DNA of 64,000 bases from assembly GCF_963853765.1 (NCBI RefSeq), contig NC_088855.1, positions 28,706,001 to 28,770,000 on the forward strand, read 5' to 3'. Below, one piece after another: positions 56,004-59,000 of the stretch (position 1 is its first letter; every line of letters starts with the position of its first letter). Source of the stretch: Magallana gigas (taxonomy: Eukaryota). A program made the position numbers and the translations under genes. Below the pieces are notes generated by a model, which was not told the origin of the DNA, did no database searches, and saw only the letters and a program-made list of their open reading frames with translations.

Positions 56004-59000
56004 TCAAGTCTGTATCTTGCTCTTGATGACGTCTTTGTCCATTCTCTGTTTAGCTGCCTCTCTCCCTTTCTTTTTCTCCTCTTCTAATGCTTTCTGCATG
56101 TCTGTGTAGTATTCAAGAGCGGCTCTCACTGGTTGAATAATGTCTTTCTACAAAATAATACACAACAAATTCTTTTATAATGCTCCAAAAAATTTCAACA
56201 CCCTCTTATTATAGATCTTGTCCCAGTTCAGGAAAATAAGCATCTGATTAAATGTGTATACATGCAAGAATTTTTTTTTTTTTTTGGTGGGTGGGGGGGG
56301 GGGGGGGTGGGGGTGGGTGTTGATTTCTATTACTAAACAAGTTCGATTTGTCAGTTTATACATTCCAGCTTCTGGAATATTTCAATTATAGTTCCCTACT
56401 TTCACATACCTCAATCACAGGGAAGAGCTCTCTCAAAGCCTCAAACAAGGGAAGCAGTGCAAACTTGATAAACCCTATCTGGGAAGAAGACTTGGTCACT
56501 TTATCTCTGTCCATGAATGGCGCCACGGGTAAGCCTTCCAGTTTCTCCATGTCACTCTGTAAAATCACACACCGAAAGTTCCTTGTAGCACTGACCACAG
56601 ATTGAATACATGACAATAATCTAATTGTTCATTGATGGAAAAAACAAAACTAAGTATATTATACGCAGTTTTCAGTTAAAAGTTTAAGTGTCGTGGAAAG
56701 TTTAATTGAAACTTCTGAACTGCAGAAAATAGTTCTTTTAATGTCGTACTTGAACAACAACACAACAAACATCACACAACATTTGATCAAAAATTTACTA
56801 TATAAAAAAACAACAACAAAAATGTGACACTCAAGTTTGTCTAAAACTATAAACATGACATGAAAGTAAAAATCTAAATATATATTAAAAGGTAACAATT
56901 TCCAGCTTTTTTAACATAGGATTTTTGAAACTTTAAGCATTATTACTTAAGATATAGGACGGGGATATTCAGTGGGTTTTTTTTTTTTTTGAATTCAGTT
57001 AGACATTGATTAGGTTTTTTTTGGATTCAATTCTTCTAGATAAACAGTCCCATTTATCAAAAGTATATAAAAAAAATAAAGACTTGTAAGTTTACAATAA
57101 AAATCCTCAAATAATTACTGGTAAAAAGAGCAATCGGCATAGTGTATAAATTGCTGCAAAATTGATATCAAGTTGTCTTTTTTCTTGTTTTTTATCATTA
57201 ATCACTGTAGTTTCATCAATATTCGTTGAATACCAATTTTTAGGAATTTCTTTGTTAAGTTAAATTAAATATATGTTCATTGATTTGCAATTTCTATTCA
57301 CACTTTGTATTGATAGGGTCATTCGCCTTGAATTTGCGTATCCTTGAAACTGTGATTTTCAATTTATCCGAGAAAATTGATACCCTTGAATATTAATGAA
57401 ACCACGCACTGTATAAGTATTCTGATACATCCAATCTCCTAATGTTATATAGTTTAGTGCTTTAGACCTAAAATAAATTTTGAACAAAACTGAACCAAAA
57501 TCTCTAAAATTATTTGTCATCATTAGTTTGAGAAAATGCATGTTGATGTACTCCAATAAATCCCACATTATCTTCTTCTTGCTGTCATTTTAGTGGTTTG
57601 TGTGTAAAATAAATTTTGAACAGAACTGAAAAAAATCTAGAACACTAAATCAGTGCACTGAATAAAAGAATAAGCATCTAAATTTGTTGTTTACTGCCAA
57701 TTAAGTCCTTACTTGTGATCACTTGGACAGTATATTAATGCTTTCGAAAGTGAATTAAAATTGTCTTTTTATTGAGTGATTTAGTGTCATATTATACCTG
57801 ATTAAAAAATTCTTGAAGAAGGCATTCAAGCCACGGCTCCGCTACATCCATTGGTCGACATTCATTTGAAATGTCTGCCACTTTTAACAATATCATCAAA
57901 AGCTGGGAAAGGAAAATAGGCAAAAAAACAAATCACAAAAAACCAAAGATAACAAAAAAAACATCTAAAGAAAAAAAGTTGCATGTATCTGTAAGAAATG
58001 AATAGGGATGACAATTTACATTAAAGAAGAAAAACATCACTAATGAAAATTTGATCAGAGGCGATTCTCTCTGTAGAGGAAATGAGATACAAGAAATATG
58101 GATGCATCAAAGAGAGACAAAACAGACAATGTTGACAGCATAAAAGCTATAATCAAAATACAAGAGCAAGAGAAAAATAATAATCAGATGACAACACAAG
58201 ACTGCACTGTAAAAATAATTTTCCAAACACTAAGAATCAGGATATTGTAGGAATTATGGGATACTGTTTTCGGTTTTTAAATCTACCTAAAATTAGCCTA
58301 AAATATTTGATTACCGGTACAATCTATAAAGTGAGGAGACTCAAAATTTTTCATGTGTAACCATGATTTTAACTTTTCTTTAAAATATATCACATGCATA
58401 TTTCAGATTTTGTGAATGCATGAACACAGAACTATATTCATGTATATTTCAAATCTTTATCTTTCACTTACAGGTTTCTTGTTGATCAAAAGTTTGAATC
58501 AACATAAAACTGCTTTTTCATATTTCATTTGTATACATTCAAGTTTACTGGTTTAGAAATCAATAAAGACAGTGTTTCACTAAAACTCCTCGGATGATCA
58601 CTGGGCACATTTAGCATTATCTCTGATCTTCAGCAAAACATAAAAACAAAAATAAAAACCACCACAAAAAAAAAAAATATAAACCAAAACACAGTCAATT
58701 CTACACAGACAGAATACGGGGTGCTTCCGCCAACCTGATTAAAAAATTCTGAAAGCAAACAATCCAGCCAAGGTTCAGCGACTCCTAAAGGTCGAGCCTC
58801 GTTTGAAATATCCGCCACTTTCATGAGTATCATCATCAGCTAAAGGTGGACAGAGGGGAAACTAAGTAAACCACCGTCATTTAATCCTGCAAGCCTAACA
58901 TAGCATTGGTACTTTCTCATGAACCCGAAAAATCATGTCTTACATAGGCTATTTTTTTTTTTCAATCATAAATTGTTTGTGAATAATTTTGCAATGATGT

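What the first reader, a model, noticed from the sequence alone, without database searches (positions are those of the whole stretch)
57798..58839. Candidate mutually exclusive exon pair in the PDE9 active site
Seen: two 105-nt phase-0 exons in tandem, both open and with valid splice sites, encode the same segment. They share 28 of 35 residues and differ at M/L, M/L, A/C, L/M, G/D, D/E and S/Q. By my count 14 of the 28 shared-residue codons differ synonymously, and the flanking introns are unrelated. Established: in PDE9A this segment (KCCDISNEVRPMEVAEPW..Y) carries a metal-ligating Asp and lines the nucleotide pocket. Inference: this is an old duplication with both copies under purifying selection. 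Including both would duplicate core helices, so exclusive splicing into two catalytic isoforms is likely. I know of no described mutually exclusive exon pair in a PDE9 catalytic core, but I cannot search the literature.
Basis: partly seen in the sequence, partly recalled or inferred. Interest (0 to 1): 0.82.

Follow-up and report, generated by a model that had tools for sequence, protein, structure and literature searches.

The report
Ancient alternative exon pair in PDE9
The oyster PDE9 gene has two old tandem copies of the exon that builds part of its catalytic pocket, and spliced mRNAs carrying only one copy exist for each; this is a real switch, probably over 500 million years old, but an ordinary kind of splicing that public gene models already list as unremarked isoforms.

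Summary
There are two 105-nt phase-0 exons on the minus strand: A at 58839-58735 and B at 57902-57798. Their peptides match at 28 of 35 residues, with 14 synonymous and 7 replacement codon differences. The flanking introns are unrelated.

The mutually exclusive reading is supported.
- B is the main form. Raw polyA reads join 59019|57902 and 57798|56556.
- A-only mRNA is also real. Sixteen assembled RNA contigs from two studies join 59019|58839 and 58735|56556 and skip B.
- Exclusivity leaks. One RNA contig joins A to B.

Selection on both copies is strong. Each peptide is 35/35 identical in four oyster genera despite 8-11 silent changes.

The pair, in the order A then B, is also present in scallop, clams, gastropods, a chiton, two nemerteans and the annelid Owenia. 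No diverged second copy was found in Lingula, Asterias or Orchesella.

All metal-binding and pocket residues (human D402, N405, E406, L420, L421, F425) are the same in A and B. The copies differ at neighbouring positions 398, 407 and 418.

RefSeq already lists A-only and B-only isoforms, and I found no paper describing the pair. Earlier notes of this scan, which I did not check, describe similar old exon pairs in other genes of this genome.

Verdict: a new member of a known kind, of moderate interest.

The parts
58735..58839 (-). Exon A, the first copy of the alternative pair. It is 105 nt, phase 0, 35 aa, and is the minor or regulated form.
   Evidence: Translation. Nine Logan RNA contigs were fetched (L002-L010) and four were aligned to the window; these join 59019|58839 and 58735|56556. 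The peptide is 35/35 identical in Magallana, C. virginica, Ostrea and Saccostrea with 10-11 silent changes, and 34/35 in Pinctada.
57798..57902 (-). Exon B, the second copy of the alternative pair. It is 105 nt, phase 0, 35 aa, and is the major form in the runs read.
   Evidence: Translation. Raw-read joints 59019|57902 (3, 19 and 0 reads in three runs) and 57798|56556 (8, 29 and 5 reads), plus RNA contigs at depth about 110. The exact B-only protein P0409 is on 467 contigs. The peptide is 35/35 identical in four oyster genera with 8-10 silent changes.
59019..59121 (-). Upstream constitutive exon (..[13 protein letters not shown]). Its donor is joined to either A or B.
   Evidence: Joints 59119/59121|59643/59645 and 59019|57902; transcript alignment; sequence.
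56410..56556 (-). Downstream constitutive exon ([19 protein letters not shown]..). Its acceptor receives either A or B.
   Evidence: Joints 57798|56556 and 56410|56147; the A-only contigs join 58735|56556; matches Pfam PDEase_I.
57903..58734 (-). Intron between A and B, 832 nt. This is too long for steric exclusion.
   Evidence: Its length in other oysters is 636-2772 nt.
58721..58734 (-). Donor of exon A with a conserved intronic tail, GTTGG[C/G]GGAAG[C/T]AC. The +3 base is a pyrimidine.
   Evidence: 12 of 14 bases are invariant in Magallana, Ostrea and Saccostrea, while neighbouring intron starts differ; C. virginica reads the same motif. The A donor has a +3 pyrimidine in all eight taxa read: Magallana, C. 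virginica, Ostrea, Saccostrea, Pinctada, Argopecten, Owenia and Lineus.
58622..58633 (-). Arm 1 of a conserved intronic stem in the A-B intron (CTGAAGATCAGA in the window).
   Evidence: A conserved block lying 63-102 nt after exon A in four of the five oyster sequences; in the C. angulata allele a 1.9-kb insertion moves it to about +2,000. It is complementary to arm 2.
58230..58241 (-). Arm 2 of the conserved intronic stem (CCTGATTCTTAG in the window).
   Evidence: The duplex with arm 1 has dG -18 to -21 kcal/mol and ranks first among 503-894 possible partners in C. virginica, Ostrea and Saccostrea. In the window it is -15.8 and ranks 16th. One pair changes from G-C (Ostrea, Saccostrea) to A-U (C. 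virginica).
57903..57915 (-). Acceptor of exon B with a conserved pyrimidine tract, TTTCCTTTCCCAG.
   Evidence: 13 of 13 bases are invariant in Magallana, Ostrea and Saccostrea. It is nearly the same in C. virginica.
56004..61557 (-). The PDE9 catalytic-domain part of the gene that lies in the window. Exons: 61557-61460, 60461-60339, 59805-59645, 59121-59019, A or B, 56556-56410, and 56147 to the stop codon at 56006-56004.
   Evidence: Splice joints, transcript-to-window alignment, conceptual translation, Pfam PF00233, and human PDE9A as the best match among solved structures.

Best explanation
This is an ancient pair of mutually exclusive exons, made by tandem exon duplication, inside the catalytic domain of the oyster PDE9 orthologue (a cGMP phosphodiesterase).

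Shown: the gene produces mRNAs with exon B only, which is the main form in the samples read, and mRNAs with exon A only, which is a minor form overall but the one assembled full-length in one series of runs. Either exon supplies the same 35-residue segment. By alignment to human PDE9A this segment runs from the end of the helix bearing the Zn-ligand Asp (human D402), through the ISNE loop (N405, and E406, which clamps the invariant Gln453), into the next helix that forms the pocket wall (L420, L421, Y424 which is F here, and F425).

Shown: every one of these catalytic or pocket residues is identical in A and B. The copies differ at neighbouring positions. Across 16 species, position 398 is Met in A and Ile/Leu/Val in B; position 407 is Ala in A and Val/Cys in B; position 418 is Asp in A and Glu in B.

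Inferred: the two isoforms are both active enzymes with slightly tuned properties, such as affinity, turnover, inhibitor sensitivity or stability. The choice is probably regulated by tissue or state.

Inferred: the duplication most likely happened once, before molluscs and nemerteans (and probably annelids) diverged.

Not known: how exclusion is enforced. The classical mechanisms do not apply. The candidate control elements are the conserved odd donor of exon A, the conserved pyrimidine tract of exon B, and a conserved stem inside the A-B intron.
For: Anatomy and selection between the copies.

Identity as PDE9: Pfam PDEase_I for four exons. Human PDE9A is the best solved-structure match, at residues 394-427. 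RefSeq names the orthologues PDE9A.

RNA evidence:
- B junctions appear in raw polyA reads of three runs and in RNA contigs.
- A-only full-length spliced contigs L002-L010 are 99-100% identical to the window's exons and skip B. There are 16 Logan contigs in all: SRR7647214 plus the series SRR12614100-122.

RefSeq lists A-only and B-only pairs for Magallana gigas, C. angulata, C. virginica, two Saccostrea species, Argopecten, Mercenaria, Mya, Haliotis, Pomacea, Patella, Liolophura, Biomphalaria, Tubulanus and Lineus. Non-RefSeq GenBank models show an A-only and a both-exon form in the annelid Owenia.

Purifying selection on each copy: zero replacement and 8-11 silent changes between oyster genera. 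The unannotated exon A is intact in Ostrea and Pinctada.

Genomic order A then B holds in Owenia, Lineus, Argopecten and Pinctada. No diverged second copy in Asterias, Orchesella or Lingula.

The A copies and the B copies each group together across phyla on a tree (SH-aLRT 84 and 82, one label change). Class-specific residues are tabulated. Residue roles come from PMC3069055 and PMC7828511.
Against: Exclusion is not strict. One RNA contig in run X5 joins A to B (depth 11.6 against about 110 for the B junctions). RefSeq and other models in many species carry both exons.

In three polyA runs, no A junction reached the listing threshold of 3 reads, and depth on A was close to intron background. 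So A could be very rare in most tissues.

No functional difference between the isoforms has been measured.

The tree rests on only 35 columns and has weak support. Owenia's second copy lacks the derived Val/Cys407 and Glu418, so an independent duplication in annelids is not excluded.

The tissue or condition of the runs that express A is unknown.

Structure prediction could not tell whether the A+B protein can fold.
Confidence: 0.85

Rival explanations
1. Exon A is an ordinary cassette exon that is normally included together with B. The biologically meaningful minor product would then be the A+B protein, with a 35-residue in-frame repeat.
For: An A-to-B junction (58735|57902) stands in an RNA contig of run X5. 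Double inclusion stays in frame, so nonsense-mediated decay would not remove it. Both-exon models exist in RefSeq or GenBank for C. virginica, an older C. gigas release, Argopecten, Mercenaria, Mya, Dreissena, Haliotis, Biomphalaria, Aplysia, Littorina, Tubulanus and Owenia.
Against: Sixteen full-length RNA contigs carry A without B. No Logan RNA contig in the clusters read carries A+B. No fragment of 38-122 aa spans A+B. No raw-read A-to-B joint reached the listing threshold in the three polyA runs. The A+B protein would contain the Zn-ligand Asp and the pocket helix twice. Run X5 also holds unspliced intron at depth 8-17, so the joint may come from partly processed RNA. Automated models can inherit the tandem form from protein alignments.
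Confidence: 0.06
2. Exon A is an evolutionary relic with no function of its own, spliced in only as noise. Only the B isoform matters.
For: B dominates in the raw reads, and A is near intron background in three polyA runs. The exact A-only protein is on 16 Logan contigs (17 records with the genome), against 467 records for B-only. Some annotations (Ostrea, Pinctada) list only B.
Against: The A peptide is 35/35 identical in four oyster genera despite 10-11 silent substitutions, and 34/35 in Pinctada. The A-type copy is kept, with Ala407 and Asp418 invariant and Met398 in 15 of 16 species, across three phyla. The A donor and acceptor flanks are conserved. A neutral copy of this age would carry stop codons; the simulation and the one decayed copy in Lineus show what decay looks like. 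In one run series, A-only is the form assembled full-length.
Confidence: 0.04
3. The pairs in molluscs, nemerteans and annelids arose by independent, convergent duplications of the same exon rather than by one ancestral duplication.
For: The 35-column tree has no strongly supported branch. Owenia's second copy keeps the ancestral Ala407 and Asp418. Lineus clearly made further copies of its own: four in total, one of them decayed. Lingula lacks a diverged pair. Independent origin of such pairs has been argued for mrp-1 (cited in PMC7434440).
Against: The order is the same everywhere (A-type first). Derived states are shared: Met398 in A copies of molluscs, Lineus and Owenia, and Glu418 plus Val/Cys407 in B copies of molluscs and nemerteans. 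The A and B labels need only one change on the tree, and holding the B copies together costs 0.7 log-likelihood units (AU p = 0.47). The A donor has a +3 pyrimidine in all three phyla.
Confidence: 0.15

Closest known systems
coq-2 exons 6a/6e (COQ-2 polyprenyltransferase) in nematodes, flatworms, annelids and molluscs (PMC7434440)
   Same: Two tandem exons of equal length, spliced one at a time, that remodel the core of an enzyme. The difference lies in a few invariant residue changes, and the pair is present in molluscs and annelids.
   Different: In coq-2 the switch has a demonstrated biochemical outcome (rhodoquinone versus ubiquinone synthesis) and a known trigger. For PDE9 no functional difference is known, and all direct catalytic residues are the same in both exons.
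Alternative oxidase duplicated exon in Crassostrea virginica (PMC5589949; title and abstract only were seen)
   Same: An oyster enzyme gene whose two mRNAs come from alternative splicing of a duplicated exon.
   Different: It is a different enzyme. I did not read the paper's body, so the details of regulation and age were not compared.
Human PDE9A splice variants (PMC1647287; title and abstract only were seen)
   Same: The same gene family, with many mRNA isoforms.
   Different: According to that abstract, the human variants differ in start codon use and localisation. From my own knowledge they differ in N-terminal exons, not in the catalytic core. No tandem copy of this exon was seen in the deuterostome locus examined (Asterias).
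Other old exon pairs noted by this scan in the same oyster genome (ELOVL4-like, GFAT, ANKRD10, Nav1, PAK, DNase II)
   Same: Tandem duplicated exons used one at a time. Several are reported as shared by molluscs, annelids and nemerteans and as already listed as X1/X2 isoforms.
   Different: They are in other genes. Those notes were not checked here.

Membership tests
PDE9 / class I cyclic nucleotide phosphodiesterase (Pfam PDEase_I, PF00233) | The catalytic-domain sequence matches the family profile above its curated cut-off. | tested here: met
   Exons A, B, 56410-56556 and 60339-60461 score 34.7-45.9 bits against a cut-off of 24.8.
PDE9 / class I cyclic nucleotide phosphodiesterase (Pfam PDEase_I, PF00233) | Closest to PDE9 rather than to other PDE families. 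| tested here: met
   Exon B matches human PDE9A chains at E about 3e-11, while PDE7, PDE8 and PDEB1 reach only E of 6e-4 or weaker. Full-length relatives are all named PDE9A.
PDE9 / class I cyclic nucleotide phosphodiesterase (Pfam PDEase_I, PF00233) | The metal-ligand Asp and the Gln-clamp Glu are present in the segment. | tested here: met
   Positions 10 and 14 of both exons align with human D402 and E406. The roles of these residues are given. Both are invariant in 32 exon copies.
PDE9 / class I cyclic nucleotide phosphodiesterase (Pfam PDEase_I, PF00233) | cGMP-specific, high-affinity hydrolysis. | not testable with these tools
   This needs an enzyme assay of the two recombinant isoforms.
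Mutually exclusive exons arising from tandem exon duplication | Adjacent homologous exons of the same length and phase. | tested here: met
   Both are 105 nt and phase 0, match at 28 of 35 residues, and lie 832 nt apart.
Mutually exclusive exons arising from tandem exon duplication | Mature mRNAs exist that contain exactly one copy, for each of the two copies. | tested here: met
   B-only: raw-read joints and contigs and protein P0409 on 467 contigs. A-only: Logan RNA contigs L002-L010 fetched, 16 on record, four aligned to the window.
Mutually exclusive exons arising from tandem exon duplication | mRNAs with both copies or with neither are absent or rare. | tested here: inconclusive
   No joint skipping both exons was listed. 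One RNA contig joins A to B. No A+B product appears among Logan proteins or fragments. The raw-read depth was too low to set a rate.
Mutually exclusive exons arising from tandem exon duplication | A known enforcing mechanism: steric hindrance, U2/U12 incompatibility, frame-shift with NMD, or docking/selector RNA pairing. | tested here: not met
   The intron is 832 nt, so steric hindrance is out. All sites are GT-AG with no U12-type donor. 105 nt keeps the frame, so NMD is out. No conserved pairing links the flanking introns to a selector. The only conserved stem has both arms inside the A-B intron. This lowers no claim about what the pair does; the mechanism simply remains open.

The most novel reading that the evidence does not exclude
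The A/B choice may be a regulated switch, specific to a tissue or state and conserved for more than 500 million years in spiralians, that yields two PDE9 enzymes with measurably different kinetics or inhibitor sensitivity. The difference would come from second-shell residues next to the Glu406-Gln453 clamp and the M-pocket helix. The choice may be governed by a new kind of control in which a conserved stem inside the inter-exon intron works together with the unusual, conserved donor of exon A.
Probability: 0.3. Interest if true: 0.6.

Novelty: new member of a known kind. Interest (0 to 1): 0.4.

Why it matters
PDE9 is the highest-affinity cGMP phosphodiesterase and a drug target. Its pocket residues 402-427 are exactly what this exon encodes.

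The natural pair has been conserved across at least two, probably three, phyla. It changes only second-shell positions (398, 407, 418), so it is a ready-made experiment on how those positions tune a PDE catalytic site. It also suggests that cGMP signalling in molluscs, annelids and nemerteans is diversified by splicing rather than by gene duplication.

The pair adds one more case to what appears to be a set of very old spiralian exon pairs. It also offers a case in which none of the textbook mechanisms of mutual exclusion applies.

The pair is not a new kind of biology, and automated annotation already lists its isoforms.

Tried and rejected
1. AlphaFold2 on the A+B protein, with the A-only protein as control. 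Both models have pLDDT below 50 across the second half of the exon region and the following loop. The test therefore cannot say whether double inclusion is tolerated.

2. Docking/selector pairing. Inverted repeats between the intron upstream of A and the region upstream of B (pairs I1, I4 and I15) are A/T-rich. They involve intron sequence that is not conserved between oyster genera. I rejected them as evidence.

3. Rfam scan of window 56400-59200 at E up to 1 found no RNA family.

4. A search for short protein fragments spanning an A-B junction found only read-through ORFs from unspliced DNA. The top hit of the exhaustive search, P0001, was the same kind of read-through ORF and is not splice evidence.

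5. A literature search for the run accessions that express A (SRR126141.., SRR7647214) found nothing. Their tissue remains unknown.

6. Literature searches for a described PDE9 or PDE mutually exclusive exon found nothing relevant. The library holds open-access papers only.

7. I did not use the count of structure pairs on the intronic stem, because it needs a long typed structure string. I read the pairs from alignment A2 by hand instead.

8. I considered arguing that A has the weaker donor. By simple consensus matching, both A and B donors match 6 of 9 positions. I therefore report only the conserved +3 pyrimidine and the conserved intronic tail.
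Full report
**Observation**

On the minus strand, window 58839-58735 (exon A) and 57902-57798 (exon B) are each 105 nt and open, preceded by AG and followed by GT.
- Of the 35 codons, 14 are identical, 14 differ synonymously and 7 differ by replacement.
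- Nucleotide identity is 73%. dN is 0.17 and dS about 2.3 (saturated), so dN/dS is about 0.07.
- In 50,000 trials, 28 random substitutions in either exon never left 7 or fewer residue changes without a stop; the mean was 18 changes.
- The intron flanks of A and B show no similarity beyond chance.

**Gene**

The exons belong to a minus-strand gene whose catalytic part lies in the window. Its exons are 61557-61460, 60461-60339, 59805-59645, 59121-59019, A or B, 56556-56410, and 56147 to the stop codon at 56006-56004.
- Four of these exons each match Pfam PDEase_I above its cut-off.
- Exon B matches human PDE9A chains at E about 3e-11, against 6e-4 or weaker for PDE7, PDE8 and trypanosome PDEB1. 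It aligns to human residues 394-427.
- According to PMC7828511, Zn is bound by His256, His292, Asp293 and Asp402, Asn405 contacts IBMX, and Leu420, Leu421 and Phe425 form part of the PDE9-specific M-pocket.
- According to PMC3069055, Glu406 holds the invariant Gln453 by a hydrogen bond, and Tyr424 bonds inhibitors.

All of these residues lie inside the alternative exon.

**RNA evidence in the oyster**

I laid three raw polyA RNA runs (X21-X23, about 1% of each read) and the contigs of one RNA run (X5) on window 55900-61700.
- The joints 59019|57902 (3, 19 and 0 reads) and 57798|56556 (8, 29 and 5 reads) show that B is spliced to both neighbours. X5 contigs carry the same joints at depth about 110.
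- No joint into or out of A reached the listing threshold of three reads. Depth on A (about 1-3) was close to the intron background in these runs.
- One X5 contig (depth 11.6) joins 58735|57902, which is A to B. X5 also holds unspliced intron at depth 8-17.

The exact A-only protein P0410 (518 aa) is encoded on 16 short Logan RNA contigs.
- Of the nine Logan contigs shown, eight come from the series SRR12614100-122 and one from SRR7647214.
- The four contigs I aligned to the window are 99-100% identical to its exons. They join 59019|58839 and 58735|56556 and skip B.
- The exact B-only protein P0409 is on 467 contigs.

So both single-exon mRNAs are real. B is the common form. A is rare overall but is the form assembled full-length in one study's runs, which hints at a specific tissue or condition. 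I could not identify that condition.

**Public gene models**

RefSeq already lists the alternatives for Magallana gigas:
- A only: XP_011418592.1
- B only: XP_011418591.1 and XP_011418593.1
- A+B: XP_034339142.1 and XP_034339143.1, seen only in nr under the older name Crassostrea gigas

The A-only protein P0410 is XP_052715428.1; its genomic record is the assembly GCA_025612915.2, which I take to be C. angulata.

RefSeq lists the same A-only and B-only pairs for C. virginica, two Saccostrea species, Argopecten, Mercenaria, Mya, Haliotis, Pomacea, Patella, the chiton Liolophura, Biomphalaria, and the nemerteans Tubulanus and Lineus (Lineus has three variants). Non-RefSeq GenBank models show an A-only and a both-exon form in the annelid Owenia.

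**Selection on each copy**

In genomic DNA of Magallana (the window), C. angulata, C. virginica, Ostrea edulis and Saccostrea, both peptides are 35/35 identical. Against Ostrea and Saccostrea, exon A carries 10-11 silent substitutions and exon B carries 8-10. Exon A is intact in Ostrea and in the pearl oyster Pinctada (34/35), although their listed proteins contain only B. Neither copy is decaying.

**Age and distribution**

The order A then B holds in the genomes of Argopecten, Pinctada, Owenia and Lineus.
- Lineus has four tandem copies, and the third carries an in-frame stop.
- No diverged second copy was found in the sea star Asterias or the springtail Orchesella.
- The brachiopod Lingula has one exon type only. 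It does carry an identical repeat of the block formed by the upstream exon plus this exon, which is either recent or an assembly artefact.

A maximum-likelihood tree of the 35-residue peptides groups 15 of 16 A copies (SH-aLRT 84) and 15 of 16 B copies (82) across phyla. The A and B labels need one change on the tree, and holding the B copies together is not rejected (AU p = 0.47). Thirty-five columns cannot give strong support, so I rely more on the residue states below.

Residue states in 16 species:

| Human position | A copies | B copies | Single-copy outgroups (7) |
|---|---|---|---|
| 398 | Met in 15 | Ile/Leu/Val in all 16 | Ile in 6 |
| 401 | Ser in 12 | Ala in 16 | Ala 4, Ser 3 |
| 407 | Ala in 16 | Val or Cys in 13 | Ala in 7 |
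| 418 | Asp in 16 | Glu in 14 | Asp in 7 |

Each copy therefore has its own derived, conserved state. This fits one old duplication followed by division of labour. Owenia's B copy lacks the derived 407 and 418 states, so an independent duplication in annelids is not excluded. Taking the age of these phyla from general knowledge, the pair is probably more than 500 million years old.

**What differs between the isoforms**

D402, I403, S404, N405, E406, R408, P409, V412, P415, W416, L420, E423, F425 and Q427 are invariant in all 32 copies. L421 and F424 are nearly invariant. The differences sit in three places:
- on the helix before the Zn-ligand Asp (394, 398, 401);
- directly after the Gln-clamp Glu (407, 410, 411);
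- on the pocket helix, but offset by two residues from the pocket-facing L420 and F424 (418, 422).

The secondary-structure boundaries come from the A-only model, which has low confidence in the loop. I infer fine tuning of an active enzyme, not a change of reaction. This has not been tested.

**How exclusion might work**

The textbook mechanisms fail.
- The A-B intron is 832 nt (636-2772 nt in other oysters), so steric hindrance is out.
- All splice sites are GT-AG with no U12-type donor.
- 105 nt keeps the reading frame, so neither double inclusion nor double skipping would trigger nonsense-mediated decay.

Introns are otherwise unalignable between oyster genera, but four elements are conserved:
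1. The A donor with its tail, GTTGG[C/G]GGAAG[C/T]AC. The A donor has a pyrimidine at +3 in all eight taxa read, which span three phyla.
2. The A acceptor region, CCTCTGTC..AG.
3. The B pyrimidine tract, TTTCCTTTCCCAG.
4. Two blocks inside the A-B intron that are complementary to each other, at window 58633-58622 and 58241-58230.

The duplex between the two blocks has these properties:
- It is the best of 503-894 possible partners in C. virginica, Ostrea and Saccostrea (dG -18 to -21 kcal/mol).
- It is weaker in the window (-15.8, rank 16).
- One pair changes from G-C to A-U between lineages, and three pairs change through G-U.

Both arms lie between A and B, so this is not a classical docking/selector arrangement. 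Its role is unknown, and with five sequences the support is preliminary.

**Double inclusion**

The A+B form would repeat the Zn-ligand Asp and the pocket helix. The evidence for A+B RNA is one contig junction plus automated models. The evidence against it being common is threefold:
- the A-only contigs;
- the absence of A+B among Logan products in the clusters read;
- the absence of fragments spanning both exons.

AlphaFold2 gave low confidence in this region for both the A+B protein and the A-only control, so it decided nothing.

**Novelty**

Five literature searches found no description of a mutually exclusive exon pair in PDE9 or in any PDE catalytic domain. The library is open-access only.
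- The closest described analogue read is the coq-2 exon pair of helminths, annelids and molluscs (PMC7434440).
- By title and abstract, another analogue is the duplicated exon of oyster alternative oxidase (PMC5589949).
- This scan has already noted several other old exon pairs in the same genome (ELOVL4-like, GFAT, ANKRD10, Nav1, PAK, DNase II). Some are said to be shared by molluscs, annelids and nemerteans and to be listed as X1/X2 isoforms. I did not check those notes.

The PDE9 pair is thus a real, well-conserved, undescribed member of a known kind.

**Limits**

- The raw reads covered about 1% of three runs of unknown tissue.

Noticed in passing
window 63812-64000 (minus strand): The 3' end of an upstream PDE9 exon (..LLRQMYIDLDLVSKFNIE), its donor and about 70 nt of intron are repeated in tandem with a period of about 138 bp. 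The transcripts match the copy at 64000-63950 at 91.5-100% depending on the contig, and the intronic copy at 63876-63812 at 98.5%. The same arrangement is in the C. angulata locus (L001:11009-11292).
   Followed up: partly
window 57204-57405 (intron between exon B and the next exon): Reads from both strands pile up here. Depth is 30-80 in the raw runs and more than 1,000 in X5 contigs, with hundreds of loose ends at 57204, 57240 and 57405. This looks like a dispersed repeat that is transcribed elsewhere in the genome, not part of the PDE9 mRNA.
   Followed up: no
L001:16072-17970 (C. angulata allele of the A-B intron): An insertion of about 1.9 kb sits between the exon A donor and arm 1 of the conserved stem. 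The intron is therefore 2772 nt here against 832 nt in the window.
   Followed up: no
L015:25292-27116 (Lineus longissimus): There are four tandem copies of this exon. Three are used in RefSeq isoforms X1-X3. The third copy (26296-26400) has an in-frame stop, which shows what a decayed copy looks like.
   Followed up: partly
L013:42039-45689 (Lingula anatina): The block formed by the upstream exon plus this exon occurs twice, about 3 kb apart, with identical peptides. This is either a recent duplication or an assembly artefact, not a diverged A/B pair.
   Followed up: no
Mytilus RefSeq proteins P0365, P0368, P0371: The Mytilus isoforms that contain the A-type exon run on into the intron after it and end early (442-472 aa). 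Only a GenBank model of M. coruscus joins A to B. Use of A may differ in mussels.
   Followed up: no
outside the window (residues 79-88 of P0394 vs P0409): The 527-aa and 518-aa oyster PDE9 isoforms differ by a 9-residue insert (GFPYYMMQI) near the N-terminus. RefSeq lists it combined with either A or B.
   Followed up: partly
I saw them only in the ORF list and ran no domain search on them.
   Followed up: no
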